Positions 865-58,390 of a stretch of DNA of 64,000 bases are shown piece by piece (the first letter of the stretch is position 1; every line of letters begins with the position of its first letter). The position numbers and the translations under genes are program-made. The stretch spans positions 244,783,741 through 244,847,740 of the forward strand of contig CM041465.1 of the NCBI GenBank assembly GCA_023213395.1, written 5' to 3'. The stretch comes from Cycas panzhihuaensis. Taxonomy: Eukaryota; Plantae; Cycadophyta. The notes under the pieces are model-generated. The model was not told the origin of the DNA and did no database searches. It saw nothing but the letters and a program-made list of their open reading frames with translations.

Positions 865-1200
865 GCAACATTAAACTCCACTAACTTGCACCAACTTCCA
901 TCCTAACTTCTCACATTTCACCACCCACATTTTTAAATATATAAAATAAAAAATAATCCACTCTAAAAAAATAATTTTATCTAATTTAACCTTTTTTTTT
1001 TAATTAACATTAACTCCACTAACTTACATGGACATCCACCCTAACTTTCCACATTTCACCACTCACTTTTTTATATATAAAATAAAAACTAAATCCATTA
1101 TATAAAAATCTAATTTAACATTTCACCACTTCCTTTTTTTTCTTTTATATATATATATATATAAAATAAAAACTATATCCATTATATTAAAAAAATTACT
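865..1200 (+). repeat. Local imperfect tandem duplications (about 140 bp unit plus a partial third copy)
   Basis: aactccactaactt...cacatttcaccac...tatataaaataaaaa recurs at about 875 and 1012, and partially at about 1120-1185. Confidence 0.7.
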
Positions 1201-1324: not shown

Positions 1325-1520
1325 TGAATCACTTAGCACTTTCTTACATAACTACAATTGAATGAAAAATGAAAAATTACACATTCAACAACATTTAACT
1401 AAAAACACTCAAATCGTGTCCTGAATCACTTAGCACTTTCTTACATAACAACAATTGAAAAACGAAACATTCAACCACATTTATTCGTGCATAATCAACT
1501 AAAACTACTTAAATCATGTA
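1325..1520 (+). repeat. Two-copy tandem repeat, about 97 bp
   Basis: tgaatcacttagcactttcttacataacNacaattgaa at 1325 and 1422. Confidence 0.8.
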
Positions 1521-2124
1521 TTTGCATCATTTCTCTCTTTTAATCCATTTCAAATCCTCTCCCTTTTTAACCCAAACAGCACAAATCCCGCCATTTCTCT
1601 CGTCATTTACCCCTATCCACCCTTTAAATGCCCTCCCTTTTTTTTTCTTTTTTTGTTTTTTTTTTTTTTTTTTTTGTCCTTTTTCTTCGGTTGCTTTTCC
1701 GCGCTTCAACCATCGATATTCCTCGTTTAGGTTGTTGCATTTACACACGCTTCCTTAACCCAGAGTCCCGACGCTTTGACCCTGGGTTAACTCAAATTGC
1801 AACCACGCCACTTCGGCTTCAATGCTTCTAAATAATCTTCTCACCTTTACGCAGAGAAGCCCCAAGCCATAGCCAGGTGAATATCACATCACATACTCCA
1901 CATCATCTTAACAAAACATAAAATAAAGATATAAATGCAAACAAACAATCCTCACTGACGAGGAATATATAAATATCCTTCCATATTCCCGACATTTCCA
2001 AAATTAAAAAATTATTTATAAGAAAAAAAAAAAAAAGGAGACCTCGCGGTCTTGGTTTCTACAGCGCTCCCCCCGCGCTGTCGTTCGAGTAACATCAGTC
2101 TAATGACACAATCTCGTTCATTCT

Positions 2125-3075: not shown

Positions 3076-6000
3076 CGCTCGGATATTTTCCGATGGCGCC
3101 TTAACGCGGATGCCTATGATTATAATAATCGAACTTTTAAAAATGGGTTCCGAGAGGAAGGTCACATTGGAAAGGGGGCCCAACTTAGCCGGTGATTACG
3201 CCTATTCTTAATGGTCTAGTTGTGTGGATGTTCACAATTGAAAGTAATTGGCTGCGAAAATTAACAAATGTACAATTTCCATTTTGAATTGCATGCCCCT
3301 CGAGATGCTCACATCTAATGGGAGGTATGATACGATTTTGGGGATCACTGAATTGTGAGTAACAAGTGGATCATGGTCATGAATATTTGAGCATCATTGA
3401 TGAGAATGCTTACAAGTTGATGCCATTCACATATTCACTCTATGAAACAAACTTGGAGCCATAAGGAGTACTTCAAAGAATCACTTTAACATCAATTGTC
3501 AATTACTTAGGCCTCTTTTATAAGGGAAAGATGGATTATAGCCATGAAGGTTTTGAAATTTTATGAGACCCCACAATACAAATGATTCTCATTTTATTAA
3601 ATTTGATAGGAAGGTAACCGATATGTTGGAACATATGCATCAGTTAAATAGCAAAGGGGAGGGACTTTTTGTTTTCTCTCAATGATTGTCAGTACTCTAC
3701 ATTGATCTTATCATGCGAGGAGTAAGTTAATTAGGCTTAATAAATGTTTTTTTTTTTTAACCATCAGAATATTATATTCAAACGTTTAATTACATATAAC
3801 ACCCACTCATGTAGCAAATGATTAGTACATGCTAGTATGCACAGATGGTAGGTGACCACAGATAACTTCATTGAGATGGGGCAAGGTTATGGAGATGAAT
3901 TCTTTCAAGGCCTTGGAAAATACTACTATCATCTTGACTCATACACACTTATTACTACTTTAAAAGATTAATTAAGGTCAACGTTCAACCTTATCATATC
4001 ACACCTAAAAATTTTCCTTTCTTGCCTAGAAAGAGAAAGATGGATGTAGGATCCCTTTATTTCATTACAATGAAAGAGGAGGTATACACTTTGTTCTTAT
4101 TATATGTTCACATGATATCCAACGATAATAAGCCCTAGCTTTAATTTCATATGACCATGTGAAAACATTTTTGTAGTTCTAGAACCAAATCTACCATTTA
4201 TGCCCTCTACATGGCTATTCTCAAGGGCATCACATTTCTAATGTCCACATTTATATTTAATAGGTGCATTAAAGCGCTTTCCAATTTTTTTGGAATTTAC
4301 TTTAGCCCTTAGATTAGGGAATTAAATGTAAAGGTGCACACTAGAAATTCCACTCCCTCTTGAAGTATCCTTGTATGGTATAATATTTGACACAATGATG
4401 ATTAATCATTTAAATTCTAGAAAGTTGAACATTCCCTAATATTTGAAGTATTAACCACTAATATTTAACATGCCATAACTCTTAGGAGTGTGCACCACCT
4501 ATGTACATTAATTATAAATTAAAATAGTAAAATTATAAATAAGAGTCCACCTTCCATAAAAATAAGAATCGTGTAAGTTGTGTTTCTCATATATTTAAGG
4601 CTTTGTTTCCCTATGCACACAGATAATCAATCATTAGTATTCATGACAAATATATGCACCTTTTATACTAAAAAAATATTCTAATAAAGGGGATATAAAA
4701 TGATGTTTCTTGGGATCTTTATATTTTCATCATAACTTTATAAAAATGTCATATTAAAGCTTTGTTAGCAATGTTTTATATGAGCACAAAGAAAGAATAA
4801 TAAATGTTATTAAAAAGTATGTGTAAATTATGTTATCGTAAACTACATACTAAAATATGTGGGAAACTTCAAATTAAAATAAGCATGACACTTGCTCAAT
4901 AGTATAGTGAAATGTGACATAAAGAGTTAATCACAAATAAAGGTGAGAAAGGGAAGGGAGCATACTTTTGGACTTTATTTTTTAAGGACCTCGCCTCTCC
5001 GATAATCGCACATGTGATTCAAGCTTCCAATCAAAGTTTAGAAGCACAAGCCTCTAATAAGAATTCATTCTTAAAGAGCTTTAGAGAGACTTGACAGTGA
5101 GATGTATATCTTTATATTATAATAAAAGGGTAATAACCAAGTTATTTAAACTATGGCATTTTAATGACAATAAATATATCATGATAACAATGTCTTTGTT
5201 GCCATGGTGTTCATGGGTTATATTATAGTTAACAATATTGTTATAGTTGTAGGAAGTAATTCAATTACTATATTGATCTTACTAACCTAGAAACAAATGT
5301 TAAGGGTTTCTTAGGTAAGAGGAAGATGAGTTCTCAATATTTAAGGCCCTAAGGAGTTGTGTCGCTTTGTTCGTAAAAATAACAAAATGGTTCTAAGGTT
5401 CAACCTTCACACATAATAACATAATCTATAATCAATATATTTTACATATTTTCTTTTTCTTCCTTTGCCTCTATAATTTTCTCCTTAAGAATAGTATATT
5501 TCATTAAGAAAAATGGAGTCTAATAAATATCTATGGCTCTTTTTAACATAATGAAAGAGTGATATTATGGAAAATTTTAACATAATATATAATTGGTAAA
5601 CACTAAGGATAAGAAAGAAGTCATAGTAAGATAGGATTATAACTTTATGGAAACCTTATATTCTACCTTAAAAAGAAATATGAAAGGACCTACAATAATG
5701 CAATACCCTAATGGTGTAAAATAATAAAGAAAATTATCTTCTCTTTTTCTTTTCTAACACTATAGATACTACCTTCTCAAGACTACCTAAGCTCAATCAC
5801 CAAAGTAATAACAATAACAATAATACACAATGAACCATAAGACTAGTAAGTCTAGATCACGCTATGTAATTCTAGTGTGCATTGACTTTACTCTTTATAG
5901 TAGGATTAAAACATATAACCCAAGTATAAATTTCCACATATGTAATATAAAATTAATATTTATTTCATGACACTTTTATAATATTTGCACAAGATTAAGA

Positions 6001-6461
6001 TAGAATGAACTTATCTTTAAGTGAAAATTTCGGATTACTTAGAGGTATTCATTGTGCAACCATTCAAAAACTCTATATAAGAATCTACCCCTAAGTTAAG
6101 ACACACGATATGAATGTTAGGGTGCTTCCTTCTAAGTCTTCACTAATAAGCCGACTCCTAATTCAATATTTTAAATCAACCAACCCATTGCTATCAAATA
6201 GACTATCGCTTAATATAAAATCTCCAAGGCTCATTTAATAGTATCACACCACATCTAGCTTCTTCTTGTACTAACATGTTAAGACTAAAATATTAGCAAC
6301 TCATACCCATAGGTCCTAGACCAAATCATTAGTGCATGGTTCTAGACCAAGCCATCAATATGTAGGATTGACGCAGGGTTTAAGACTGAGTCATTATTAC
6401 AAGCCATAAAACATATATTTCCTTACCATGGAAAAATTTCCTACATATTAACCATGGGAAC

Positions 6462-9400
6462 TATTGGAAATATAAGTGAATTAGAGTAAAAAATAATAAG
6501 TAAATAAGAGCAAATGACTTGATCACAATTATACAACAATTTATAAGAAATAATCTTACATTATATCATAAATAAATATAATAGCTCTGAGTATCTACTC
6601 TTCTTGCATCAAATAATTAATTTAATCAATTGATTAGAGTAAGATCACTCCGCCCCTAATAATAATAGTGTGAGTAAAGAATAAAGCAGTAAAACAAGAA
6701 AACATCAAGATACATCTTATGCATGATCTTGCATATGAGAGAATAAATATAAAAATATAACTCTTGAGAGAACCTATCTAATGTGGCTCATTAGTTAATT
6801 TAAAGAAAAGAATGAGTAAGAATTAGACATTATTTTTAACGCCCTCTTATAATGTATGATTCATTATTTATTATAAATAAAAGAGTTATAAGCCTCTCAA
6901 AATTCTCATGACTTAATGCCTAAGTGAGAGTATCAATAAGTTTATCCTCTATTAAATAATAAACCAACTTAAATACTCAGCATTATACCTACCTCTAAAT
7001 GGAGTGATGATGAACTTCCACGTGCTTTATCTTAACGTGGAATATTAGATTCTTCAAAAGTCAGATTGCATTATGATTATCATAAAATAATAGTATAGGA
7101 TCATCCTGTAGAAGTTCAAAGTGACCAAGTAGCCTCCTTAGCCAAATTTCTTCATAAATAGCTATAATTATTGTCTTATACTCTACTTCTATGGAAGATA
7201 ATGAGACTATAACTTGTTTCTTTCTACCCTAAGAAACCATACAAGAATTAGATACAAATACATCTCTTACCCAATTCAAGTCTATATAGTAATATAGTAT
7301 GAACTCATTAGCTCTAGAAAATAAGAGTCCAAATCTAATAATGCCCTTAACATACCTCAGTATGTGTTTTGTTGCATTATAATGAGAGATGGATGGAACA
7401 CTCATAAATTAAGTTATAACACCAATAGTATAACTAATACTAGACTTAGTGTTAGTAAGGTGGATGAGACTACCCATTAGTTACCTATACAAGTACCATC
7501 AATAGTCTCATCATCAGCTTCCTTAGTCAATTTGAAGCCTATTTCTATGGGAGTTAGAAATTGGCTTTAAATCTTCTATATGGAAACATCTCAATAAACT
7601 ATATGTATACTTGGACTAAGAAATAAAAATGATATTACCTTTATATTAAAATTCTATACTAAGAGTTGTGAGACAACCATAACAGAATTAGTATCTACTT
7701 ATATTACTTTTGAATTTATAATTTAATGATGTTCATTTTTACCTTAAAAAAAAAATCCATACCAAGATAGTAATGCAAAAGGCTAAGATTAGACATCTCA
7801 AAATCTTTAAAAAGATGCTTCTTAAGAAAGTTGATTTGAGAAGTGTTACTACTTATAATAATGAGATCATCAATATAGAGACTTATAATAAGTATCTCAT
7901 AATCCTCGTGTTTTATATATAATTTGTTATCAGATTTATATCTAGAAAACATAAAAGAGATGAAGTAATTATCAATGTAGAAATACCATCACCTTGGTGC
8001 CTACTTATGCCATATAAGATTTTCTTCAACCTACATATAAGATGCTCTTTACTAACCTACAAAAAACCTTTAAGATACTGCATATAGACCTCCTCATCAA
8101 GAATGTCGTGAAGGAAATCACTCTTAACATCTATTTGGTGGAGTTCCTAATCAAAATGAGATGCAAGATTCACAAGTATTTGGATGGTAGTCATTTTGGC
8201 TACAAGTATAAAAGTCTCTTCAAAATCTACACCTTTTGTTTGCACATATCCCTTTGTTATAAGTTGAACCTTATATTTATTAATAGTACTATCAAATCAA
8301 TACTTTACTTTATATACCTACTTGTAACCAATAGCTTTCTCATTTGATAGAAGTTCAACAAGATTCTATATGTCATTTTCAAGAATGAAGTCATACTCCT
8401 CTTGCATAACTAACTACTAATGAGATGTATCCTTAACTTCAATAAATGACTCAGGCTCATCACTATTTAAGACATTTGATATCAAGGCATAATTGACCTT
8501 TTTATGTATTTAAACACTTGCAATAGTATTCATGTCACCAACCTTAAAGTCTTTAAGTATAGCACTTGGATAACTTTTTAAGATGAAAGGAGAAAGATGG
8601 AGCATCTATAGGAATTTCATCACTCTCTTTGACCTTTTTATTAGTTTCATTCTTTACTTCTTTAATATCAACATTTACAATAGGAATAATTCCCTCATTA
8701 AACTTATCAAACAAAACATCCATATTTATTATGATCTTTTTCTCTAAGGGATCTCAAAGCCTATATGCTTTAGATGACTCATTATACTTAATAAGAATAC
8801 ACTTATGAATTTTGTCATCAAGCTTTTATCTATAAAAGTAGTACATCCAAATACTCAAAGATTACAAAGGAGAGTTTTCTGCTTGTCTAAGCTTCTTTAG
8901 GAGTTATGTTTTGAATAGTTATAATTGGAGTTCTATTTAAAATATATATAGTTATATTCATAACTTATCCCAAAAAACCATTTAAGATATTTTTGGCTTT
9001 AAGCATATATATAACCACCTCAACAATGGTATAATGTTTTCTTTCAAATACATCATTTTGTTATGGTATATAAGATGATGTAAATTATCATTGAATGCTA
9101 TGATCTTATAGAAAGGTGTGAATTTAGTTGGTAAGTATTCACCTTTGTTGTCACTACTCTTCACTTTGATCTTCCTTTCAAAGAAGTTTTCTACCCCAGT
9201 CTTGAACTCTTGAACTTTATAAATGCTTCTAACTTATTCTTTAGAAGGTAGACCCAAGTCCTCCTTTTTAAGTTATCAATGTTATGAAGTACTTTGTGCT
9301 TCCAAGTGAAATTAGTATAATTGGTTAATATAAGTCATATTGTGCCAACTCTAATTTATCCTTAGACTACCATTTAGACTTGACAAATTTCTCCCTATGT

Positions 9401-12027: not shown

Positions 12028-15000
12028 GGAACAACTAATATGTTCATAATTCCTTTTAATAAGACCTCCACTTATATTAATGTCATACATTTATTAATAA
12101 TATAAATTCAAATATAGTTATCATAAGGAAAATCAATAATGCAAAAGTGAGTATTATCTACTAGTAGATCTCTACTAGATTCCACCCTATGATATAAGCC
12201 ATCCTTAGTAACTCTCTCCTTTCTACCTTTCTTGAATGCACTCTTCTCTTACCAGAAAATAATGAAAACCCCCTCCTTCTTCTTTTTTCAAAGATGCTCC
12301 TCCTCCCTTTTAATAACGAAGAAGTCTCTAAAGCAAGTCTCTTTAAAGTAAATGAAGATTCTTCTAAAATAATTGAAATCACACTAAAATCCATACTAGT
12401 TTGAAAGTAAGTATTTATTTTTTCCCATAAAGTTCATATCGTTAATATTATCTTAAAAGTAAGACTTTATTTTTTCCCATAAGTCTCCAATCATTAGTAC
12501 TAACCTAAAAGTAAGACTTTTTTTCTTTATAAGACTCCTATTATTAATACTAGCCCAAAAGTAAGACTTTTTTTCTTCCCACAAGTCTCTTATCATTAAT
12601 ATCCCTTTTCTATTATATAAATGATTTAAGATGGAAAGTGGAATTATTAAATAGGATTAGAAATAAAAGTCATGGATTCTAGAATTTTCCCTTTCATTCA
12701 TATCATATATCCTCTTTTATTTACCTTTATCCCTTAATCAATCTAGCCATATTTATTTAATGGAATTAGTATTTATATCATTTACAATGTATGGGTATGT
12801 GGACCCTAAAATATTTGTAAGTACATAACATACGCACATATACTTTCCAACTTTAAGGTTATATAATACCATATTCTAATGTGAAAGGTGCATCTTACAC
12901 ACTTAGTGGGGCTTCTAGTTAACTCCCATTTATATCAATGGGTGATTACATTAAAATACTAAGTGAAAACATAAAAATGAGAATATAATGAGGTATATAT
13001 AATAAATACAAATGGGGTATTATATCTGATCTTCCTCAAAAGAAGCATCAATGCCAATGTGACCATGTGATATAAAAATATATGGATATTGCTATTGCAT
13101 AGTCTTTATTAGCTCCTAAGTTGCTTCATCAAGTTCCATATGGTTCCATTAGGCCATTACTTACTCTATGGCTTGGTTTCATATATTTACCCTTCAATCT
13201 AATATCTATATGGGTTCCACCTAAAATTACACTCTAGACTCAACCTGAATAATTAACTAGTTAACAACATTTAAATTATATGATAATATAAGCTTATATG
13301 CAATGCAACATATTCTCTTTAGGATTTCAAATAGTATATAGTATCTTGTTGCTAATTTTCTACATCTTCATAACTTTAAAGAACTTTTCTTTAGTTTCAC
13401 TTGAATAAATATGTGGTCCTTAATACTAAATTCTTTTATTATCCTTTTTAGATCTACATAGCCTTTCCATCAATATTGAGTTACCTTCAAATGCTTCGTA
13501 ATCCTAGTGACATGCTCCTCCATTTCTTATAATATTTTTGGTTCAATCATATAGTCATCTTCTAAATTATCCTAATAGTGTATTATACCTATGTCCATAT
13601 AATGCTTCGAATAGGCTCCCTTAAGAATGCATGTTGGTTATCGTTACAGAAAAATTCTACTAAATATAAGTAGTCATCCCATATAGATGGTTTTCCTATT
13701 AGATATATCCTAAGCATATCCTTAAGTTCTTGGCTAACTCATTTGTTTTCCTCATCTGATTTTGGATGGTAAGCAGTATTAAATTTTAATTTAGTTCCTA
13801 TTAATTTGAATACTGCCTACCAAAACTTAGATATAAACTTTGCATCTTGATCTAAAATTATTACTTTTGGTATTTTATAGTGTCATACTCTATTCTACAT
13901 GAAGATTTATACTATGTTAATCACTTTATATGTTAAATGCATAGGAATAGAATATATTAACTTTATTAGCTTATCTGCTATTAGTATAATACGATCATTT
14001 TTTCTTACATTTTAAAAAAGGCTTGTAATAAAATCCATGGAAATTACCTACCATTTTTATTGTGGAATTTCTAAAGGTTGTAATAATCCTATAGGGTATT
14101 GATGCTCTACTTTGACCTTCTAACATTATAAATAATGAGCAACATAACCCACTACATCCTTCTTCATACCTAGCCAAAATAAATCTTTCTTTATAGTTGC
14201 AAGAGTCTTTTGATATCCCATATGACCTATATAAGGAACATTATGAGACGACTCTATAATTAATATTCACATTGAAACATCATTTGGAATATAGATTCAA
14301 TATTAGAACATAGAGAATCTATCATTTAAAATATGATAGTCTATATACTTTTGTGTCAGCCTTGCATTTACTTGTTTATTTTGGGACTAACTATCTAAAA
14401 AACCCTTCACTTATCTATACTAGTCATCATCAAGTAACTTCTATATGATGGTAGTTTTTAAGTCAAGTTAAGTAATACTAATTGTAGCAACATAAACTAA
14501 TCTCAAGCTAGGTTGAGCTAGACTAGTATAAGCAACATGTCTTCTATGACTTGATGCATTTACAATTCTATTCTCCTTCCCCCTAATATGCTTTATATCA
14601 AAGTCATACTCTAATAAGAAATCCATTCATCTATTTTGTCTTATATTCAATTATGGTTCTATAAAGAGATATCTTAAGTTGTCATGGTAACTTTTTAACC
14701 TAAACTTCTTTCCCAAAAGGTAATATCTATATATTTTTAATGCATGCACCACTGTAACCAACTCTAAATCACGCATTAGGTAATTTATTTTATGATCCTT
14801 TAATTTTAGTGACTCATAAAAAATTACATTACTATTATGCATGAAAACTTTTCTAATTTCTTCTACTTAAGTATTAGTACAAATGACATAGTTTGCATTA
14901 GGACCTGGTAATATAAGAATAGATGTAGATGTGAGTAAAACCTTGAGTTTCTAAATTTTTTCTTTACATTTGAAAGTCCACTCAAACTTTTCACCCTTCT

Positions 15001-22012: not shown

Positions 22013-23660
22013 TGTGATAACCTAATACTCTAATGTTATAAAATAATAAAGAAAAATTTCTTCTCCTTTCTTTTTTTGACATCAAGTATATTACCTTCTC
22101 AAGCTTATCTAAGATAATAAAAAAAATAACAATAATAATAATAATAATACGTAGTAAACTATAAGACTAGTAAGATATATGCTAAGTTGACAATTTAAGG
22201 GTCTTAGAATATAGATCACAATACGTATCATTAGCATGCTTGCACTTTACTCTTTATAACAAGATTAAAAAATGTAACCTAGGTATAAATTTTTACACAT
22301 GTGATATAATCTTAATATTTATTTTATAACTTTTATAGAATATTTATATAATATTAAGATAGAATGAACTTATTCTAAGTGGAAAAACTAGATTTCTTAG
22401 AGGTATTCATGACCTAACCATTTAAAAACTCCACATAAGAATTTGCTCCCAAGCTAAGGCATGTGATATCAGTGCTAGGGTATTTTGCTTTGACTCTTTA
22501 CTTGTGATTTAAGTCCTAATTCAACATTTTAAATCCACTAGTTTATTAATATCAATCAAATTATGGCTTAATATAGAATCTCCAAAGCTCATATGATGGT
22601 ATCACAATATATCTAACTTCTTCATGTGCCAATATGTTAGGACTAAAACTAATGGAAACTCAGAAATATGGTCTTAGACCAAATCATTGATATATGGTTT
22701 TAGGCCAAGCCATCATCATAGATTACTTATGTATGGTCCTAGACTAAGCCACTTATATATAGGATTAATGTAAAATTATAGACCAAGTTATTGTTATAAG
22801 CCACATAATATATTTTCTCACCATGGAAGAAGTTCATATATATTGAGCATATGAGTAACTAGTATGCTCATAATCCTTTTCAATAAAGCCTCCACTTATA
22901 TTTTTATCATATTCTTACCAATAACATAGATTCTAATAGAGCTAATATAAGGGAAATCAATAATATAAAGATGAGTATTACCTAGTAATAGATCTCTACT
23001 AGATCCCACCCTATAATACAAGTCATCCTTAGCAATTCTCTCCTTTATTCCTTTTTAAAATGTTCTTCTCTCTTCTTAGAAAAGAATGAAAACCTCTTTT
23101 TTTCTTTTAGAATGTGCTCCTCCTCCTCCTTCTCACTTCTAAAGATAAAGAAGTCTCTAAAGTAGGTCTCCTTAAAGTAAATAAACAGTCTCCCAAATTA
23201 AGTGAAATGATACTAATGTCAATACTAGTATAAAAGTAAGACTTTATTTTTTCTCACAAGGTTCTTATCATTAATACTAACCAAAGTAAGAATTTTGTTT
23301 TGCTCAAAAGGATCCTATCATTAATACTAGTCTAAAAATAAGACTTTTTTTTTTTTTTTTCCCATAAGGCTCTTATTATTAATACTAACCTAAAAGTAAG
23401 ACTTTTTTTCTTCTTGCAAGCCTTCTATTATTAATACTCTTTTCTTATCATAAGAATGGTTTAGGCAAAAATGTAGAACCACTAAATAGGATTAGACATA
23501 AAAGTCATAGATTTTAAAATTTATTCCTTAGGAATTTCCCTCTTGGTCATGTTATATGCTCCCTCTTATTTACTTTTGTCCCTTAAGCAATCTGTCCATA
23601 TTTATTTAGTGGACTTAATATTGACATTAATTATAATATATGGATATGTGGACTCCAAAA

Positions 23661-24986: not shown

Positions 24987-25853
24987 ATATCTGATGGAAA
25001 TAATGTTGCATCAAAACATGGCAGAACATATATCAAATAATCATAAATCAATATTGCATCAATATATCAATGTATCATAATCACAATAGCATAAACCATG
25101 AAAGCATTATTGTTCAATCCATTGTAGCAGAAAAGAGTAATATAAATTTTCAATAAGGAGGCGGTGTCTAAAAGACATTAGGGTTACGCACTCCTTAATA
25201 TTTATAATTTGGGGGAGGAGGGAAACTCCTCAACCCCTGAATTTAAAATAATAATAAAATAATATTCACTTAACTCAAATGAAACTAACTTAACTTAACA
25301 TAAATCAAAGTTAAACTTACCTTGACATGCTGAGTATCACATGTCTAAATTGAAGTTGATGAGGTGTATAATCCTGGTTGGAAAGGTGGGAGTGGAGTGA
25401 TGATGATTAACTCTAACATTCTCCCCCTTAATGTCATCACGAACACTTGTATCTTTTCCTTGAACTTATGGAACTTGTACTTAAAAAAAACTTTAAAATT
25501 TTGATCTTTATCATCATGCTTCAACCTTCTTACAACATATGTCTTTATATCATGAAGTAATTCAAAAAAGCTATGAGTAAATGATGCTTGATCCAAGTAT
25601 GTATGTATAGATAGAACTTTGACTTTGTCAACTAGAACATTGAGAAAAATTTGAATTTAAACTTGTATGCTGTCAACAACTGTCATATCATAAGATTCTT
25701 TTTTGTTATATCAGATTCATTTTCCATCATGTCATAGGATTCATTTTCATTCTTCCCCTCAAATGGAGGATCAAATCCTTGTGTAGCAAGTTGGTCACAT
25801 ATTTGATCTGAATCTTCATTGATTTTGTCATCATAATCCATCTGTTATGTCAC

Positions 25854-26156
25854 CTATTTCACATGCTCAATAAAAATATTATCAAATACATGGAGGGTAT
25901 CTCCCCCATAAGTAGAAATCAATACATTCCAAACTGATTTAGAAGTTGTTAATTCAGAAACCTTTGAAAAAACATCATCATTCATAGTGCAAAATAATAA
26001 TCCTAATGCTTCATTATCCTTTCTAATGTTTTCCTTAATACTAACATCATAGTCATGTCGTAAATACTTCCATAAATCATGTGCAATAAAATAGTTTTTC
26101 ATAACCTTATGCCATTCTGAAAAATTTTGCCCATCAAATATAGGTAATTGTGCCAT
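25854..26156 (-). pseudogene. Copia-type gag N-terminal region (DUF4219/UBN2-like)
   Basis: LPIFDGQNFSEW...MKNYFIAHDLWKY...KDNEAL...FSKVSELTTSKSVWNVLISTY. Confidence 0.85.
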
Positions 26157-27711
26157 GTTATAAAAAACTTTAGAACATATAAAGTATGCTTTTACTAAAT
26201 CAAAAAAGTCAATAAGTAACTAAACTTATATGATATCAAATATATTTTTTAAAAGAAATATAATGCCTTTTGAAAATAAATGAACTAAATGCAATAAGGA
26301 AATAATGAATATAGAAGCAACTTTAAAATTATATACTAATATTCTTATAACGATAGAAATCTAAAATAAGACTTTAACCTTTAGATTTTCTTCAAATGAA
26401 TAAATGTAAATTCTTAATGCAATAAATCCTTAGCCTTGATAATAATATATAATGTTAAAAAATATGAAATATATGTATATTTTACTTTGAAAAATAAGGA
26501 GTATGAAGAAACTTTTTAAAAGAAGGGTTAGAGGATAACCTTAAGTTTGACAGCTTCAAAAATATAACAAAGGATATCAGAATGATGTGAAACTTTACGA
26601 ATATGAAGATAAACAAAATATGAATCCAACTGAACTAACCATTTTAAAAACGGGTTCCTATAAGTCAAGTTTTAATGATCCAAATTAAACAGACCTTGTT
26701 TTGAAGCCTAACAAGAGACGAGGCTCAAAATTGTATAAAAATGCTAATAAAACTTTATAAAATGTTGAGAAATAATTAAATATTATTTAGAAGACTACTC
26801 AATATACCTTTAGCTAAAAATTGTTGAGAAATATATATAAAAATGTGTAAAAAATAGCACATTTAAAATGATAAAGTACCTATATTTTGAGCGATTTAAA
26901 AATTAGTAAAAATACGTTAAAATGTATAAAAAACTATATCAAATCAAAGAGAATTGACCCAACAAAACTAACAAAACTAAATTTGGATGTCAAACAAAAA
27001 AGTTATTGCAGAAATAGTAATAGGTACCTTTATAGTAAAATGTTAAGAAAAATACTAAAAACCACTAAAATGCCACTTTCAGCGATTAAAATAGTGGTTA
27101 AAATGAATTCTAAAAAATAAAATAAAAGGTGGGTAATGAATTTTGTTGAATGTAGATTACTTTAGAAAAAAATCAGGCAAAAAATAGTTTCCCGGTAATA
27201 AAATACAATTAGTTCAAAAAGCGATTTTGTAAAATGTTGTAAAAAGGCTGAAAAAAAGGGTTGATTGACTTTAAATCGACTGAAACGGGGTCAAATCAGC
27301 AGTAAATTAGTCATATGACTAGTCAAAATTAATCTAAAAAAAATTTCTGATCTAATGGAATTGATTTCGTCAGAAACTGATGCTCCAGCGAGGAGTTATG
27401 ATAAAAAAACTCCAATAACCTTATGTAGGATTAAAAAATTAGAAAAAATAAAAGAAAGAAATTTTATAAAAGTGATGAAACCCTGTTTAAAATGAATTAA
27501 TGGTCACATGGCTGAGGGTTGAGTATGCAAGGGTTCTAGGGTTTAAAAACCTTGGATTGAAAATCTTATAGAATTTATTTAAATTTTTTTAAACTTTATA
27601 AAAAAAATAAATGAAACCTAAAAAAAAGAATGTTGTTGTCACACCTCACTGCTATCCCTGCACCCGCGCTATTGCTGCACGCGGCCTGTCACGTGAACAT
27701 GCGAAGAAACG

Positions 27712-28228
27712 AAGCTACGAAGAGAGCGTGAATATGATGTTGTGTTAAAGGAGTTACAAGACTCTCAGATTCAGGTTGTCGTGCTTCTAAAGGAATGCAG
27801 AGATGTTCAGCTTTGCTTTGGAGTTGATCATGACATTTCTAAAGATGATACTAGAATTGATATTGGTCCTTTAGCTCCTAATGGCACTATGATGAGGCAA
27901 CCTTTAAAGTTGCAGCTGATTGAAAGAGCAGTCCAGCACGATCGAGTCACTTCAAGGCACTGTTGGAATGTATAAGAGGCTTTATGAGGAAGAACTCAAA
28001 TCTCATTCATTTTTCCAGTATTCTACAGAAGTTTCTCCAGATGATGGAAGGAAGGATCTTAGGAGGCTTGTAGAGATTTCTCAGGAAGATTCCCGTAAGG
28101 CACAGGAGCAGGCTGCTGAGCGTGTTAAACATCTAGAAGAAGACATAAAGAATGCCCAACATGAAGCCTTTGCCTTGAGAGCTGAGAGAGATCAACTTGT
28201 GTTGGAAGCAAGCTATGCACGGGAAAGG
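27712..28228 (+). pseudogene. NUA: Intronless fragment of NUCLEAR PORE ANCHOR (TPR/Mlp homologue) with internal deletions and frameshifts
   Basis: LRRERE...QVVVLLKECRDVQL, DEATFKVAA, and EQSSTIESLQGTVGMYKRLYEEE...DGRKDL...RKAQEQAAERVKHLEED...LRAERDQLVLEASYARER match recalled plant NUA motifs (LLKECRDVQL, MYKRLYEEE, RSERDKLAMEANFARE). Confidence 0.88.
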
Positions 28229-28663
28229 AGGATTTTATACAAGTTGTAGAACACTCTATTACTGTCACACTTCTGTATATTGCTTTGGTTGCTGGTCTTC
28301 TTAATCGATTTCCAATGAAATTTACACAGCATTCAACTGGTCACTTGAGAAATCGTAAGGCTAGGGGCTCTAGCAGATCATCATGGAGATATTGTGATGT
28401 TTGCTAATGTTACAGGAGTTGATGAAGTAAAGGAGGAGCTTGAAGAAATTGTTGAATTTCTACGAAACCCAGATAGGTATGCACACCTTGGTGCTCGTCC
28501 TCCCCAAGGAGTCCTCCTAGTTGGGCTGCCTGGGATAGGAAAGACTCTTCTAGCAAAGGTAGTAGTTGGGAAAGCTGATGTTCCTTTCATAAGCTATTCA
28601 GCAAGTGAGTTTGTTGAACTATATGTTGGTATGGGAGCATCTCGTATGCGCGACCTCTTTGCA
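28222..28663 (+). pseudogene. FTSH9: Intronless, permuted fragment of the chloroplast FtsH7/FtsH9-type AAA protease
   Basis: LLYIALVAGLLNRFP...TGHLRNRK, a frameshift, then [51 protein letters not shown]...[22 protein letters not shown]. The LVGLPG and YVGMGASR signatures fit the FtsH7/9 clade. It stops before Walker B. Confidence 0.92.
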
Positions 28664-31600
28664 GGACCAAGCAATGTCTAAGGTTCGTTAGGGGTGAACC
28701 TCGACCAAAGACTATAGTGTGAAGCCAAACCTTCAGCATACGACTCAAAGAATTTTCTCTTTGTGATTATGTTACAGATTCAATTGTTACAACCCAGGTG
28801 ATAACTCAGCAGGTAGAGCCGGCTTTAAGGTAGTGATTCCCTAAAAATTTGCTTAATGTGCAAAAAATTGAAAGCAGTCATATCCAAGTCATGCAAGCAG
28901 CAATGAAGCTTGAGATTCCTATCACTATGACTCAAGTGGAAAGCAATGACTGTAATAAAAAAACTTGATAAAGTGCCCTATATACTATTGAGGATTTAAA
29001 ATTTTAGTAGGAGATTTGGAATGTAGATGGCTAAATCCCAAATCTTCGTTTATGTAATATGTGGAATATTGTATTCTTTTTGTAAAGGATGTACTATTTC
29101 AAAAAATCATATATCTGTATAAAGAAAATATGAAAACAATGTTGAGTTTTTCTGTTGAACAGGAATAGTATTCATACAAATTGTATACCATGAAAAAATA
29201 TTTCAAACATATGTTGAGCTTTTGGATATGAGATAATGACTGCAAAGAATATTTCAAAAAATATATAGATATTTTTGTACAAAAAATATAAAAAATGTTG
29301 ATTTTTTTTTTGTTGATTCAATAGAGCACAAATGAAAATAGAAGATTTCAAATATTTTGACAGAAATATATCAAGCAAATAAGATGCATGTATATGTATC
29401 TGAAATCTTTTCAAATATGTTGCAACAGATGTATCAAAAATATGTGTTTAAAACTGAAAAAAATAACTAAAGAACCTGGTAAATATGGTTGTAACTGACT
29501 TGCATAAGTGAGATCTGCTGTTTAAACTTTTGCAGAAGGTTGAATATGCCTCAAAAAATTGTAGATCTAGTAATGTAATTGATTTGTAGACAAAAATAAG
29601 CTTCCAATAGATAAATTTTCTTCCTCACAAGTTGAATATAGGAAGATCTGTAGATCTGAAAGGCTGAATATGCAAAAAAAAACTGTAGATCTGTAACAAA
29701 CTTGAAAAAATATCATCAAATATATGATGAAAAAATATAGATCTAAAAGAGAATATAACAGATCTAAAGAAAACTTGAGAAAATATTGCAGATTTTAAGC
29801 TAAATATTACAGATCTGACGTGAGTATAGTAGATCTATAGCCAAATATTACAGATCTAAATGAGTATACTAGAGAAATGGTCAAATAACTGGTAAAACAA
29901 GTAGATGTGTATACTATGTAGCAGATCTGAAGTGAAATGTAGTAGATCTAAAAAAAATAACTCAAATATGAGAAAAAACTTGAATATATATAACTTATTG
30001 CTAAAAATAATGATGAAATATAAGATAAAATGTGTAGAACTGAAGAAATATGGATCAAAGCTGAGAAAAAACTTGAGCAAATATGGCTTGCTACTGAAAT
30101 CCTATGTAGATATGCACAAATCTAAAAATATATCTGAGAAACATTTGTTAAACAAAAAATATAACTCAATAATAGTCAAAATCTACTGAAATAATATATA
30201 AAACTTGCTGAAATTTTTTTAGAAAATAAATATTGTTAATATTTCTTGCTTGTAAGAAAATCTGTCATAGAATGCTAGTAAATCCTATTGCTCTTCTTCA
30301 AAAAACTTCACCAATGGAGATGCAATAGCCCAAAATCTCGCTCTGATACCAATTGATGGAAATAATGTTGCAGCAGAACAAGGCAGAACATATATCAAAT
30401 AACCATAAATCAATATTGCATTAATACATCAATGTATCATAATCACAATAGCATAAACTATGAAAACATTATTATTCAATCCATTGTAGCAGAAAAGAGT
30501 AATACAAATTTCTAATAAAGAGGCGGTGTCTAAAAGACACCAGGGTTGCACACCCCTTAATATTTATAATTTGGGGGAGGAGGGAAACTCCTCAACCCCT
30601 GAATTCAAAATAATAATAAAATAATGTTTACTTAACTCAAATGAAACTAACTCAACTTAACATAAATCAAAGTTAAACTTACCTTAACTTACCTTGACAT
30701 GTTGAGTATCACATATTTAAATTGAAGTTGATGAGGTGTACAATCCTGGTTGGAAAGGTGGGAGTGGAGTGATGACGATTAACTCTAATAATATCTAATT
30801 CTATATTAAATTTAATTAATGTTTATTCTACAAAGTAAATATAAAGATGGAGAGTAGGGATTTTCTAATGTTAAGCTCTGAAGTTATACTACCTTAAGTT
30901 TGAATGAGATTTAGATAAACTTTTTGTTTTCAACATACTTTTAATCATTCTATTATACCAATTATTTATCACTATATAATAGCCATTAAGAAGCCATTTT
31001 ATTATCCCTTAGAAGCAAGTGTGGTGGTTAGTATAGTAATTATTAATTCCTCATGTTTGAATATTATTTTAAATTTATTTTATAAATGGACATTTATCCT
31101 TATTCTAGTATAAATAAGGTTAGGTTTAAATATATTGAGAGCTATGATTATGCTAAAATAGCCTAGAAAAATCATTCTTAATATTAAAATATGGTACAAG
31201 AAAACATATTCCCATACCACATGTAAGACACACTAACCAATCACAGGTCTAGGATTCACAACAACACATTATTATGTCATGTTAAATATTAAAAAATCAT
31301 CATAAGGATATGTACACAAATATTATGAAATATAAGAAATAAATCATATCAAATATATGAACATGCATAAACATCACCGCGAGATGCCATATATAAACAT
31401 GGAAAACCCAAACTAGGGAAAAACCATAGGAGAAGGTTGAAGGCTAGCTTCACTCTATTAATTATATAATAAAGACACCCCTTCCACTCTCAAGTTTTTC
31501 AAGTGGGTATGTACATATTTATAGAACAATCTACCTCATGATGAGCCTATCACATTACAAAGCCTTCTAACTTTCCAATAAGAGGTTACTATTAATAATT

Positions 31601-50700: not shown

Positions 50701-52963
50701 TGGTTCTGCTAAAAATCAGAGGGAAAAGCCTATGCCAAATAAGATTTTCAGACCTAGGCTGAAAGAGAGGTAAACATGGATGTAACTCTGAGATCTTGGA
50801 GCTTACTTGTTGAGATGCTTTGAGTGCCCTCCTTCCACGAAATAGACCTACAAAAAGGGAGCTTGAAGCTATTGGAGCAAGGCCTGAGATGTAGCAGGTG
50901 TCCTGTGGATGAGGAGCCAGAGCAGAGGAGTAGATCTTGTGAAGGTTGTAGAGTGGGAGCTAGAGTAGAGAGCAAAAAATGAACCCAGAAGAAGAGCAAA
51001 TGGCTTAGTTTTTTAGTTTTATACTCACCCCAATCCTAAACAAACGTTTAGGGTTACGGTGGGGGTGAGTACTCGATGGCACCATGTGGCAATTTCGTAG
51101 AAAGAGTGGGAATCGTTGAGGCAGTTTAAAAAAATGAGTTTAAACAGCAGTTGCCGCGACAAACTTTATGCACTGATTAAATTTGCAGTAGTACGAGACT
51201 AAAAGTCAAAATTAAGGCAGAACTGAGGCCTAGAGCCAAACATAAGGGGTGCAGAGGCTGGGCAGGCTGGGAGCTTGTGCCAAGGTGGCTGGCAAGTGGT
51301 CGAAAGAGAGAGACGAGTCTCAAGGGGAGGGGAGGGAGGGGTCCTATCACATCTAGAAGGAGACTCAAAGTGATGACAGGTGTATTGACGTAAGCGGGTC
51401 GTGACCAACGAGATGTTCGAGGAGCTGTGGAGGTGTTGCGGGTAGCTGAGTGCCATATGGAGTGCATGACTCACTGAGGAGTGCCCCATGATGGGTCATC
51501 ATAGGCTGAATAATATGTGGCAGGCACAAGCAATGTGATCAAATAAAGAAGGCAATGCGATCACACAAACGGCAAGCAAGTATGCATCAAACAACACTCT
51601 AAACAACTCTTACTAAGTGATAGCTGAAGGTGAGAAGTATATACCTATGCTTACTTGAGTCGACCCATCTCAAGTCCATTCCCAGTAGCTAGGAAACACA
51701 CCCCCATCGCAAGAGTTCCTCCCCCTTATTAATTTTCTTCTTTCTTAGTTGCATGCTCATTAAAAAGGGAATAAGAGAGTAGATAAGGGTTTATCTTACA
51801 CTGTGGGAAGTAAAAGGGAGTTAATTCATAAGAAAGGGAATAGATTTATTCCTCATTTTATTTTAGCAAGAAAAATATCAAAAGTAAGGGTGTTTTTGGG
51901 TTAGTATTGCATATAGGAAAAGATTCTCTACCTTTCCCCCCTCTTTATTTTCCCCCTTGCTTGCATCTCTTTCTTTTCCCTTTAGTTAGCTTATATATTA
52001 TTTTAAAGAAAAAAAAAAGAAAAGAGAGAATAGAGTGATAAAGAAAAAGAGAGTGAGGTATTTGCTTGCTTTGCATTCCTCTCTTGTTCTTTTTATTGCT
52101 CTTATTTCCATATAACCTAACAACATAGTAGATAAACCCAACCACACCCTTCTTACCCAACCAAATGGGTTCAGGCTTATTCCCTTCTTTACTCTCTCTT
52201 TTCTCTTCTTCCTCTCCCCTCTATTTTTGCCATATTGTCCCCTTACCAAGGGTGATTACCCAATTATGCCTCTTTTCTCAAAAACCCTAAGCCAAAGGGA
52301 AGGGATTATGCCTATGCATTCCTGAATCTATACCTCCATGGTGAATGAGCACCGTATGCAGTTTGCTCGAGACTCCATTACACCCACATACTAGGTTCCA
52401 TACCCTAGACCTAGCCCTTAGTGGCGTTTGTTGTATTAGGTACCCCTGACATGAGTGATCTCATTAGCAACCATACTAGGGAATACTAGTTAGAATGCTT
52501 TAGGCCTCTTTTAGACTTCTTGTGCACACTTTGTCCCTTGCATAAGGCCTACCAGGGTATCCTTCTTTTATATATTTTATCTATTGATCTCATTCCTCTT
52601 CTATTCTCTCTACTTCCTTATGCATAGTGTTTCACTTGCATATGTGATGCTTCTCAATTTTCTTACATGGTTTACCTTCCATTGAAGTAGAGCCCATCTA
52701 CTCCTATATCCCCTCATCTCACCAATAGTCTCTAATTGAGGGTTATTGATCCAGGAGGATCTACCATATGTTTACAGGATGCAGAAAATGCTAGGCAATG
52801 GAATAACTGAAAGAGATATGGCCAAATGGTATCAAAATTATATGAAATTTTGTGTAAAGGAAGAAGTCACATCCCACTACATGTGTGCAAAAGGTGGGGT
52901 TCAGAAAATGTCATTTGATTAGAGTTCAAGCCTTGTTTTGCATAAACTTAATCCCACAGCTAG

Positions 52964-53353
52964 CAGAAAAATAACAAATACATATTATAATTAAATGAAT
53001 TAAAATATAGTTTAATGATATCCAAATGAGCTACAATTTTGAAGAAGAAGACGAGATATATGTTCCTATATGTGTACCAAATTTGAGCTAAATTGGAGTC
53101 AGTTAAGGTTAGTTACAAGATGAAATGTTTAAGAATTACATGAAGGCCACTTGGACAACAGAAAAACAACAAATACATATTATCATTAAATGAATAAAAA
53201 TGTATTCAAATGACATCCAAATGAGCTAAAATTTTGAGGAAGAAGAGGGGACATGTGTTCCTATATGTGTACAAAATTTGAGTTGAATTAAAGTTAGTTA
53301 AGGTTAGTTACAAGCTACAACATTTAATAATTACATGAAGGCCACTTGGACAA
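52964..53353 (+). repeat. Two tandem 195-bp units inside the 5' LTR (also at about 58654-59043 in the 3' LTR)
   Basis: cagaaaaa(t/c)aacaaata...gaaggccacttggacaa repeats at 52964 and 53159. Confidence 0.92.
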
Positions 53354-53940
53354 CATGCATTCTGGTGGTTAGTGGTTATACTTGCATGATTGCCACTTAT
53401 TAAGTAGGAAATTTAGGTTTCTTTCTATAAATTAAGCCCTATTATGGGTTGGAGAGGTAGTTCTTGGAGGTGAAAGGCATTTAACTTGGGAAGCATCCTT
53501 GGAGAAGCATTTTGGAAGGTTGGAGTCCCCTTTATGGTATAATTGTATCATTTATTCCTTATAATTTAACTATTCTTTTGCTAGTTGATTTCTCTACCAT
53601 CAAATGGATATTTTCATAGTTTAATAAAAGTACTACTCCTCATACTTTTGGATCAATGTCAAGAATAAATGATTTGGTGTAGAATTTCCTTTTGTGGGCT
53701 CATTGTTATTTTTGATGTTATTAAGATTTCTACACTAACTCCCAGGATCTCAAGGAGAAAAGGTTGATAATTGACTTCTTCATCAATTAAGCTCTATTTT
53801 GGGATCATATTTTGGTATTAGAGCATGTGATCTTTGTTGTAGGGACTTGAATGGTATAAACAAGGAAAGGATACAAAGAGAAAGGTGAAGCTTTTCTTGT
53901 GTTGCAATCACCAAGAAGACAAAGAAAGAATCCAAGCACC

Positions 53941-56900: not shown

Positions 56901-58390
56901 TCTTCTACTTTTGTTTATAGTTCTCTTATAAGTTTGTAGGTGGAGCCAATGCATCATGAAGAGTAAAAAGGCTTGTACCATGAAGATGAAGCTTTGAAGG
57001 AAGAATTAGAGAACCTAGCGAAAGGAAGACCTTCCCATCTTGCTTAGAAGGATGGTCTACTTTTCAAAGGGGAGCAGCTTTATGTTCTATCAAAAGGAGA
57101 CAAGATCAAGTGGCTTAGAGAAGCCCATACTTCTAAAGTAGCTGGTCACTTTGGTATAGAGAAGATTTTAGCAAACTTGAGAAGATATGTTGTATGGCCA
57201 AAAATGTAAAATGATGTAAAAAAATATGTAAAAAGATGTGTAATGTGTACTACTTCTAAGCCTTCTTCTAGAAAATTAGGATTGTATACACCACTTCCTA
57301 TTCCCACTAGACCTTGGGAAAGTATCTCCATTGATTTCTTAGGGGGACTTCCCATGACTAGGAAGGGACATGATTATCTCTTTGTTGTTGTAGATAGGTT
57401 TAGTAAAATGATATGTCTAATACCTTGTAAGAAGACAATCACGAGAGCAGGGCGGTGAGTTATTCTTTAAGCATGTATGGAAGAATTTTGGCTTGCCTTC
57501 TTCCATCATTTCAGATAAGGATATTCCTTTCATCATTTTGGAAGTCACTATGGGAGATGATGGATACCAAATTTAAGAGGAGTACAAGTTTCCATCTTCA
57601 AACAGATGGACAAACCGAAGTAGTGAACATAACTTTGGTACATTTATTGAGGGGATATAATTCCAAGCATCCAAAGACTTGGGATGAATCATTGGATTTT
57701 CTGCAATTTGTATTTAATAGAGCAATGCATGCATCACACTCTAAAGCACCTTTTGAAGTTTATTTGGGATACTTGCCTCAAAGTCCATTTGACTTAGAGT
57801 TTTCCATGCAAGTTAAGGAAGGATCCGTCAAAGAGAAGGAAGAGCATGACAAGGCTTTAAGATACTTGGAGAAGATCCAGAGAGTCCGCAAAGAAGTACA
57901 TGATTAACTTCTAAGGACTCAACAAAAGTACAAGGAAAGACATGACAAGCATAGGCAAGAGTATACTTTTCAAGAAGGAGATTTAGTATGGTTATACTTG
58001 AGCAAGGAGAGGTTAAAAGGAGAAGGCAAGAAACTCAAACCTATAAGGTATGGACCATTCAAGATTTTGAGAAAAGCAGGTGGCAATGCTTTCCAACTTG
58101 ATCTTCCACCTTATATGCAAATATATTTAGTAGTAAATGCTGAATATTTAAAACTATTTGAGCCCTTTATGCTAGATGAGGAACATGACTAGTTCACTTT
58201 ACCTGTAGTTGATGACTTGTATTTGGAAAGTGAGGAGCCTCTCAAGGAAGATTGTATCTTGGAGAGAAAATCTACCAAAATAAGATATATGACACATGAA
58301 TCTTTTAGGATTGAAGTAGCAAGATAATTGCCTAGTAAGGCCAAGTGGTTTAGTAGGCAACAAGGAGAACAACACTTCCCCCATCTCTAA
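53941..58390 (+). pseudogene. gag-pol polyprotein broken by stops and frameshifts
   Basis: Zinc knuckle CEHCDISGHIAAKC, protease IIDPGSQKNLIS...HPHLYPLGW, RT FTKLDLKSGYHQV and VVYLHDIL, RNase H EADASG, integrase WESISIDF...VVVDRFSKM and HLQTDGQTE. Confidence 0.95.

What the first reader, a model, noticed from the sequence alone, without database searches (positions are those of the whole stretch)
28222..28320. Back-splice-like junction in the FtsH7/9 retrocopy: candidate circular-RNA-derived pseudogene captured by an LTR element
Seen: one open frame reads GKEDFIQVVEHSIT|VTLLYIALVAGLLNRFP, with the junction at 28263/28264. Knowledge: in FtsH7/9 the motif DFIQAVERSIA lies after the AAA domain, just before GIEKK, whereas (I/V)xLxYxAxxAGLLxRFP is the transmembrane segment before it. 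Three transitions (GCT>GTT, CGC>CAC, GCT>ACT) convert AVERSIA to VVEHSIT. A downstream segment is therefore joined in frame to an upstream one with no intron sequence. Inference: if both breakpoints are exon ends (my recollection of FtsH9 introns suggests so, unverified), this is a fossil back-splice of a circRNA or trans-spliced RNA. Such pseudogenes are reported in mammals; I know of no LTR-borne plant example.
Basis: partly seen in the sequence, partly recalled or inferred. Interest (0 to 1): 0.92.

Follow-up and report, generated by a model that had tools for sequence, protein, structure and literature searches.

The report
Ring-RNA copy inside a plant retrotransposon
A broken copia-type jumping gene in this (probably gymnosperm) genome carries pieces of a chloroplast protease gene joined last-exon-to-first-exon, the mark of a DNA copy of a circular RNA, something so far described only in mammals.

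Summary
Window 28221-28263 and 28264-28663 both match one FtsH7/9 mRNA contig of a related organism. In that mRNA the 44-nt piece lies 434 nt downstream of the 400-nt piece, so the order here is permuted and implies an 888-nt ring.

Host genomic DNA could not be fetched, so I took exon boundaries from gene models of the alga Closterium. Those models put phase-0 introns exactly at both breakpoints (P0041 L290|V291 and A586|G587). The neighbouring Q312| boundary is also seen in a seed-plant-like genomic reading frame. The 400-nt piece crosses three ordinary exon joins without introns. Its far end is mid-exon, and its join to the neighbouring NUA-like piece shows 5-8 nt of microhomology. So 28263|28264 is most likely a splice-made back-junction that a reverse transcriptase copied while hopping between RNAs.

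The carrier is a gag-only copia element on the minus strand, with LTRs, a 5-bp target-site duplication (TSD), a primer-binding site (PBS) and a polypurine tract (PPT). Its cargo is antisense and is a mosaic of at least six transcripts. DNA contigs from another organism bridge the same junction.

This scan noted similar cases elsewhere in this genome (SelO, CSN6, and a full 893-nt FtsH turn); I did not test them.

Still open: intron positions in the host itself, and RNA evidence for the ring.

The parts
24987..24991 (.). Target-site duplication ATATC, left copy
   Evidence: the same 5 bases flank both LTRs.
24992..25418 (-). 3' LTR of the copia element (the element reads on the minus strand); TG...CA ends
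   Evidence: 91.5% identity to 30354-30788. Ends read.
25419..25429 (-). Polypurine tract (minus strand AAGGGGGAGAA) abutting the 3' LTR
   Evidence: read directly.
25857..26156 (-). N-terminal copia gag fragment; the only element protein left, no pol
   Evidence: PF14223 Retrotran_gag_2 E 1.5e-10 and DUF4219; no long ORF elsewhere in the element.
27721..27889 (+). NUA/TPR-like transcript piece 1 (positions 1729-1897 of a 7385-nt transcript)
   Evidence: record 25. Weak Pfam TPR hit. The gene name is not firmly tested.
27924..28228 (+). NUA/TPR-like transcript piece 2 (2108-2412 of the same transcript); 210 nt of the mRNA are skipped and 34 other bases stand in between
   Evidence: record 25 and the joints table.
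28221..28263 (+). FtsH7/9 'downstream' piece, the 3' end of the exon that ends at A586 (P0041 numbering). It overlaps the NUA-like piece by up to 8 nt (28221-28228).
   Evidence: record 26 (record 977..934)..
28263..28264 (+). Non-colinear exon-exon junction (A586 codon joined to V291 codon), the candidate back-splice junction
   Evidence: Exon boundaries from Closterium models.
28264..28663 (+). FtsH7/9 'upstream' piece, residues 291-427: second membrane helix and the start of the AAA domain. Spliced. Ends mid-exon after DLFA.
   Evidence: record 26 (record 1822..1412). PF00004; the seed-plant exon runs VGLPG...FIDE.
28329..28330 (+). Ordinary exon join Q312|313, crossed without an intron
   Evidence: Closterium P0060 runs into an intron after MKLPQ. 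Genomic reading frame P0277 starts there.
28379..28380 (+). 11-nt deletion relative to the mRNA; it shifts the frame and makes the copy a pseudogene
   Evidence: table 4: X7 has 11 extra letters behind 28379. Searches show the frame change.
28453..28454 (+). Ordinary exon join EEIV|EFLR, crossed without an intron
   Evidence: genomic reading frames P0279, P0280 and P0282 begin ...Q|EFLR.
28519..28520 (+). Ordinary exon join GVLL|VGLPG, crossed without an intron
   Evidence: about 40 plant genomic reading frames begin ...Q|VGLPG; P0280 reads through that intron.
28740..28997 (.). Four more short pieces (33-117 nt) from four other transcripts; 28664-28739 is unassigned
   Evidence: records 27-30.
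30340..30351 (-). Primer-binding site (minus strand TGGTATCAGAGC, initiator tRNA-Met type), 2 nt from the 5' LTR
   Evidence: read directly.
30354..30790 (-). 5' LTR of the copia element
30791..30795 (.). Target-site duplication ATATC, right copy

Best explanation
A circular RNA made by back-splicing of the host FtsH7/9 pre-mRNA was one of several cellular RNAs copied by the reverse transcriptase of a copia element. The ring comprised the exons from V291 to A586, 888 nt, bounded by two phase-0 introns.

The enzyme hopped between templates. It entered the FtsH template mid-exon and ran across three normal exon joins. It then crossed the back-splice join, copied 44 more nt, and left for a NUA-like mRNA at a short microhomology.

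The resulting mosaic of at least six transcripts lies antisense in the leader of a gag-only, non-autonomous copia element. That element integrated with a 5-bp TSD and the family later multiplied.

Shown here: the permuted order; the spliced state; the LTR carrier and its orientation; the mosaic; sharing of the junction by other copies; and agreement of both breakpoints with orthologous intron positions.

Inferred: that the host has these two introns; that the RNA was a ring; and that the copying happened inside the particle. The antisense orientation suggests plus-strand synthesis on RNA, or minus-strand synthesis on a first-strand cDNA.

The copy is a dead fragment, with an 11-nt deletion and stop codons.
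For:: one linear FtsH transcript gives both pieces in reversed order, with a 1-nt overlap at 28264. DNA contigs 11 and 12 of run X2 bridge the junction, with 122/114 and 41/117 nt on the two sides.

Closterium P0058 diverges into intron read-through, starting with V (GT), right after ...NTIS and right after ...ERALA. P0052 starts ...SQ|STLLY. P0157 is the canonical model. These points align without gaps to L290|V291 and A586|G587.

the Q312| boundary is seen in a seed-plant-like genomic reading frame, and the intron before EFLR is shared from algae to angiosperms, so old introns of this gene are conserved.

the exit at 28663 lies 14 codons inside the VGLPG...FIDE exon.

the NUA-like and FtsH pieces overlap at 28221-28228.

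All FtsH sequence in the window lies inside residues 291-586.

LTRs, TSD, PBS, PPT and gag.

PMC4897178 defines the same signature in mouse and human and notes LTR enrichment around such copies.
Against: The host's own FtsH7/9 gene was not read. The two intron positions come from a zygnematophyte alga, and only the neighbouring boundary was seen in a seed plant.

No RNA data show the ring.

This copy holds only half a turn (443 of 888 nt), so circularity is not shown by this locus alone.

The parent sequences share CTGGT around both breakpoints. A reverse-transcriptase jump with little homology is therefore not impossible, though an in-register jump there would leave two G where the window has one.

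The antisense orientation is not what the simple LTR template-switch model predicts.
Confidence: 0.68

Rival explanations
1. The junction was made by splicing but not in a ring. Either trans-splicing or exon repetition between two FtsH pre-mRNAs produced it, or a tandem duplication of the V291-A586 exon block in a host FtsH7/9 paralogue was spliced normally. The linear RNA was then copied.
For: It gives the same exon-end to exon-start join and the same in-frame 888-nt unit. This locus holds only half a turn, so a ring is not required.
Against: The one assembled FtsH transcript of the related organism is colinear, with no repeat (record 26). None of the 120 best plant FtsH7/9 proteins shows a duplicated block in this region. 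Unchecked notes of this scan describe a full-turn FtsH copy with redundant ends elsewhere in the genome, which a ring explains better.
Confidence: 0.14
2. An ordinary reverse-transcriptase template jump within or between linear FtsH mRNAs, like the other joins of the mosaic. The agreement with exon ends is chance, or the host's introns lie elsewhere.
For: The cargo is plainly a product of many template switches: at least six transcripts, in pieces of 33-400 nt. Such chimeras are known for LTR elements (PMC5131818). Both parent sites share CTGGT.
Against: Both breakpoints fall to the codon, and in the same phase, on orthologous intron positions. My estimate of chance is about 1e-4. Only 1 nt is shared at the actual join, against 5-8 nt at the neighbouring NUA-like/FtsH join.
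Confidence: 0.12
3. A DNA-level rearrangement (deletion, inversion or unequal exchange) of a once colinear FtsH retrocopy, after integration.
For: The insertion is old (LTRs 8.5% apart) and carries small deletions (the 11 nt at 28379).
Against: Contigs of another organism share the junction at 5-11% divergence, so it predates the spread of the family. A rearrangement would not land on two exon ends, and a deletion cannot reverse the order.
Confidence: 0.03

Closest known systems
CircRNA-derived pseudogenes of mouse and human (Dong et al. 2016, PMC4897178)
   Same: The defining mark is the same: an intronless copy with an exon-exon junction in reversed order, made only of exons inside the ring, with no poly(A). 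The mouse copies are enriched for flanking LTR sequence.
   Different: Here the host is a plant, probably a gymnosperm. The copy sits inside a fully defined copia element with TSD, PBS and PPT. It is one tile of a mosaic of at least six transcripts, lies antisense to the element, and covers only half a turn. In mammals the carrier and mechanism were left open.
LTR-mediated retroposition chimeras (Tan et al. 2016, PMC5131818; maize Bs1; rice retrocopies inside LTR elements)
   Same: Spliced host gene fragments from several genes replace internal parts of an LTR element. There is microsimilarity at a fusion point. The chimera multiplies as a non-autonomous element.
   Different: The published model has sense-oriented cargo copied from linear mRNA. 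Here the cargo is antisense, and one internal join is a splice-type back-junction rather than a microhomology join.
Other 'ring' cargoes noted by this scan in the same genome (SelO s1-822533, CSN6 s1-838454, FtsH full turn s1-829080)
   Same: Permuted host gene segments inside copia elements. One follow-up reached the same reading for SelO.
   Different: These are different loci and, apart from FtsH, different genes. I could not read their sequences, so it is unknown whether the FtsH full-turn copy shares this junction or is the ancestor of this one.

Membership tests
circRNA-derived pseudogene (sense of PMC4897178) | Two segments of one gene joined in reversed (non-colinear) order | tested here: met
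   on one linear transcript, window 28221-28264 lies 434 nt downstream of window 28264-28663.
circRNA-derived pseudogene (sense of PMC4897178) | The reversed join is exon end to exon start (a back-splice site) | tested here: inconclusive
   Met in the Closterium orthologue, to the codon and phase, at both sides. The neighbouring boundary is confirmed in a seed-plant-like reading frame. The host gene itself was not readable.
circRNA-derived pseudogene (sense of PMC4897178) | Intronless, and containing only exons that lie inside the ring | tested here: met
   Three normal exon joins are crossed without an intron. The only FtsH matches in the window are residues 287-427 and 568-586.
circRNA-derived pseudogene (sense of PMC4897178) | The matching circular RNA exists in the organism | not testable with these tools
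No RNase R data were available.
LTR-mediated retroposition chimera (PMC5131818) | Cargo lies between two LTRs of one element that has a target-site duplication | tested here: met
   LTRs 24992-25418 and 30354-30790, with ATATC on both sides.
LTR-mediated retroposition chimera (PMC5131818) | Microsimilarity at fusion points | tested here: met
   the NUA-like and FtsH alignments overlap at 28221-28228 (5-8 nt). The other fusion points could not be examined because the parent letters were not shown.
LTR-mediated retroposition chimera (PMC5131818) | Cargo in the same orientation as the element (minus-strand synthesis switching to mRNA) | tested here: not met
   PBS, PPT and gag are on the minus strand. 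The NUA-like and FtsH pieces read on the plus strand.
Ty1/copia LTR retrotransposon, non-autonomous | TG..CA LTRs, 5-bp TSD, tRNA-Met PBS, PPT, copia-type gag; pol absent | tested here: met
   There is no ORF of 150 aa or more inside the element.

The most novel reading that the evidence does not exclude
In this large plant genome, copia particles repeatedly reverse-transcribe host circular RNAs and fix them, antisense, in non-autonomous elements that then multiply. This FtsH junction, the full-turn FtsH copy, and the SelO and CSN6 cases would all be products of one process. That would give a genomic fossil record of plant circRNAs, and a concrete carrier for the circRNA-to-DNA route whose mechanism was left open in mammals.
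Probability: 0.45. Interest if true: 0.85.

Novelty: new variant of a known kind. Interest (0 to 1): 0.72.

Why it matters
DNA copies of circular RNAs are documented only in mouse and human, and how they are made is unknown. I found no plant report: three literature searches turned up none, and a 2026 review of gene capture by plant transposons does not mention circRNA.

Here the copy lies inside a complete LTR element, next to joins that carry the marks of reverse-transcriptase hopping. That names the likely enzyme and setting. It also dates a plant back-splice event to before the spread of the element family.

The element's transcript would carry several hundred bases antisense to two host genes. 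That could matter for silencing, but this is speculation and was not tested.

Tried and rejected
- The search for related loci with P0041 on metagenome contigs: all 80 loci were bacterial FtsH at 39-56% identity, with no plant DNA.
- The search for homologous proteins with the 61-aa junction frame: no candidate. Given the length window and a degenerate query, this blank says nothing.
- Looking for annotation indels or isoforms at exon ends among the 120 best plant FtsH7/9 proteins: none fell in residues 270-640.
- N-terminally short plant models: all start at internal Met and are uninformative.
- The look-up of sequencing runs: no run holds more than 28% of the words, and none is on record as RNA.
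- Considered and rejected: that the 14-aa match is chance (the DNA match to the same transcript rules this out); that the end of the 400-nt piece at DLFA is an exon end (it is mid-exon); and that the cargo is a separate nested transposon (no terminal repeats, poly(A) tail or own TSD were seen, and other genomes' contigs continue across the cargo borders).

Full report
**1. The observation**

Frame 1 from 28222 reads GKEDFIQVVEHSIT directly followed by VTLLYIALVAGLLNRFP. After a frame change, an AAA-ATPase segment follows (Pfam PF00004, E 9e-12).

As protein, the short first part is not significant alone (tblastn E about 1). The DNA evidence settles it. I laid the contigs of four public runs on 27600-29000. 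The transcriptome-like run X7 gave one 3222-nt FtsH contig that matches two window stretches:
- window 28264-28663 (17 differences and an 11-nt gap), and
- window 28221-28264 (4 differences).

In the linear transcript the short piece lies 434 nt downstream of the long one. The order in the window is therefore permuted. A ring that closes the two ends would be 888 nt, or 296 codons.

The best named relatives are plant 'FTSH 7/9, chloroplastic' proteins. The nearest are gymnosperm sequences (Wollemia, Cryptomeria and unnamed transcript-derived proteins).

**2. The carrier**

Direct repeats at 24992-25418 and 30354-30790 are 91.5% identical. They begin with TG, and the left copy ends with CA (TA in the right copy). 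Both are flanked by ATATC.
- On the minus strand, TGGTATCAGAGC lies 2 nt inside the right repeat (30340-30351).
- A purine run abuts the left repeat (25419-25429).
- A copia gag fragment reads on the minus strand at 25857-26156 (PF14223, E 1.5e-10).
- There is no pol: no ORF of 150 aa or more lies inside the element.

So this is a non-autonomous copia element on the minus strand, and the gene fragments are antisense to it.

**3. The cargo is a mosaic**

One search assigns these stretches:
- 27721-27889 and 27924-28228 to one 7385-nt transcript. It is NUA/TPR-like by a weak Pfam hit; the name is not firmly tested.
- 28221-28663 to FtsH.
- Four further stretches of 33-117 nt, between 28740 and 28997, to four other transcripts.

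The NUA-like and FtsH alignments overlap at 28221-28228. That gives a microhomology of 5-8 nt, the usual mark of LTR-element template switching (median 6 bp in PMC5131818).

The three DNA runs each laid 158-204 contigs on the stretch. Two contigs of run X2 bridge 28263|28264 with more than 31 nt on each side. The junction is therefore shared by diverged copies in another organism and predates the spread of the family.

**4. The decisive test: are the breakpoints exon ends?**

I used two indirect sources instead.

*(a) Short reading frames called on plant genomic contigs.* These run from exon into intron, so they show exon ends. They give introns before EFLRNP, between GVLL and VGLPG, after IFIDE and after NQLLT. 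One frame (P0277) begins at the residue after Q312.
- The window sequence crosses Q312|313 (28329|30), IV|EF (28453|54) and LL|VG (28519|20) without introns. It is therefore a copy of spliced RNA.
- The long piece ends at 28663, after DLFA. That is 14 codons inside the VGLPG...FIDE exon, so it is a mid-exon break.

*(b) Four NCBI gene models of the FtsH7/9 orthologue from four Closterium strains.* They differ only where a model ran into an intron:
- P0157 is colinear with the plant proteins.
- P0058 departs right after ...LVNTIS, and again right after ...AVERALA. Each departure begins with V (a GT donor read in frame). The second runs to a stop within six codons.
- P0052 begins with a repetitive stretch ending ...SQ (a CAG acceptor) directly before STLLY.
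- P0060 departs after ...MKLPQ.

In an ungapped alignment these points are L290|V291, Q312|R313 and A586|G587 of P0041, all phase 0. The first and third are exactly the two breakpoints of the window junction. Joining 'codon of A586' to 'codon of V291' gives the observed ACT|GTC, with one G and in frame.

Within the stretches I inspected (about 130 codons) there were three such boundaries. The chance that two arbitrary breakpoints hit two of them, to the base, is of the order of 1e-4. This is my estimate, not a tool result.

This gene keeps old introns. The one before EFLR is shared by algae, a bryophyte-like contig and angiosperms, and Q312| is shared by Closterium and a seed-plant-like frame. 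The simplest reading is that the host has both introns and that the junction was made by the spliceosome.

**5. Contrast between the joins**

The FtsH/FtsH join has at most 1 nt of shared sequence and sits on two exon ends. The NUA-like/FtsH join has 5-8 nt of microhomology. The other FtsH end is mid-exon.

The parent sequences do share CTGGT around both breakpoints. An in-register jump there would leave two G, whereas the window and, as far as shown, the other copies have one.

This pattern fits a reverse transcriptase that hopped between RNAs by microhomology and, while on the FtsH template, simply read across a join that was already in the RNA.

**6. Mechanism**

The most likely source is an exonic circular RNA of FtsH7/9 (V291 to A586) that was present with other cellular RNAs where the copia reverse transcriptase worked. 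Half a turn (443 nt) was copied.

The antisense orientation is not explained by the standard model, in which minus-strand synthesis switches to an mRNA. Two alternatives would give it:
- plus-strand synthesis switching onto RNA templates, or
- minus-strand synthesis copying first-strand cDNAs of those RNAs.

This step is inference.

The fragment is dead. An 11-nt deletion after 28379 shifts the frame (table 4), and stop codons follow.

**7. Rivals**

- Trans-splicing, or a tandem duplication of the exon block in a paralogue, would give the same join. The related organism's transcript is colinear, and no plant homologue shows such a repeat. The host itself was not checked.
- A chance template jump is disfavoured by the exon-end agreement.
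- A later DNA rearrangement is disfavoured because other copies share the junction.

**8. Context**

PMC4897178 defined circRNA-derived pseudogenes in mouse and human by exactly this reversed exon-exon junction. It noted LTR enrichment around them and left the mechanism open.

Three literature searches found no plant case. A 2026 review of gene capture by plant transposons does not mention circRNA.

Notes of this scan list further permuted cargoes in copia elements of the same genome: SelO (with a follow-up that reached the same reading), CSN6, and an 893-nt FtsH 'full turn' about 67.4 Mb away. These are unchecked leads. I could not read those loci.

**9. Limits**

Exon ends come from an algal orthologue. 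There is no RNA evidence for the ring. Host identity is only 'nearest to gymnosperm FtsH7/9'. 

Noticed in passing
window 27890-27923: Between the two NUA-like pieces, 210 nt of the transcript are missing and 34 unrelated bases stand in their place. Contigs of runs X1 and X2 carry about 10 extra bases here. This could be a skipped exon plus filler, or two more template switches.
   Followed up: no
window 28664-28739: A 76-nt stretch between the FtsH piece and the next assigned tile matches none of the transcripts shown for run X7. Its origin is unknown.
   Followed up: no
window 26157-30339 (minus strand): The cargo lies in a 4.2-kb AT-rich stretch between the PBS and the gag start, not in place of pol. 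Near 29500-29950 this stretch holds many short repeats built around AGATCT.
   Followed up: no
window 52747-59045: A second LTR-bounded element. Its repeats at 52747-53355 and 58437-59045 each contain a tandem pair of about 195 bp. It holds the only long ORFs of the window (54516-57907, plus strand).
   Followed up: no
window 27721-28663: A transcript of the element (minus strand) would carry about 470 nt antisense to the NUA-like gene and 443 nt antisense to FtsH7/9, so it could pair with the host mRNAs. This is speculation only.
   Followed up: no
window 5853-6642, 12033-12687, 22212-23522: Three dispersed copies (74-79% identity) of another repeat family, upstream of the element.
   Followed up: no
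proteins P0052, P0058, P0060, P0157 (Closterium, NCBI): Four strain annotations of one FtsH7/9 orthologue disagree at intron borders. P0157 is fused to an upstream gene, and P0058 and P0060 contain translated intron.
   Followed up: partly
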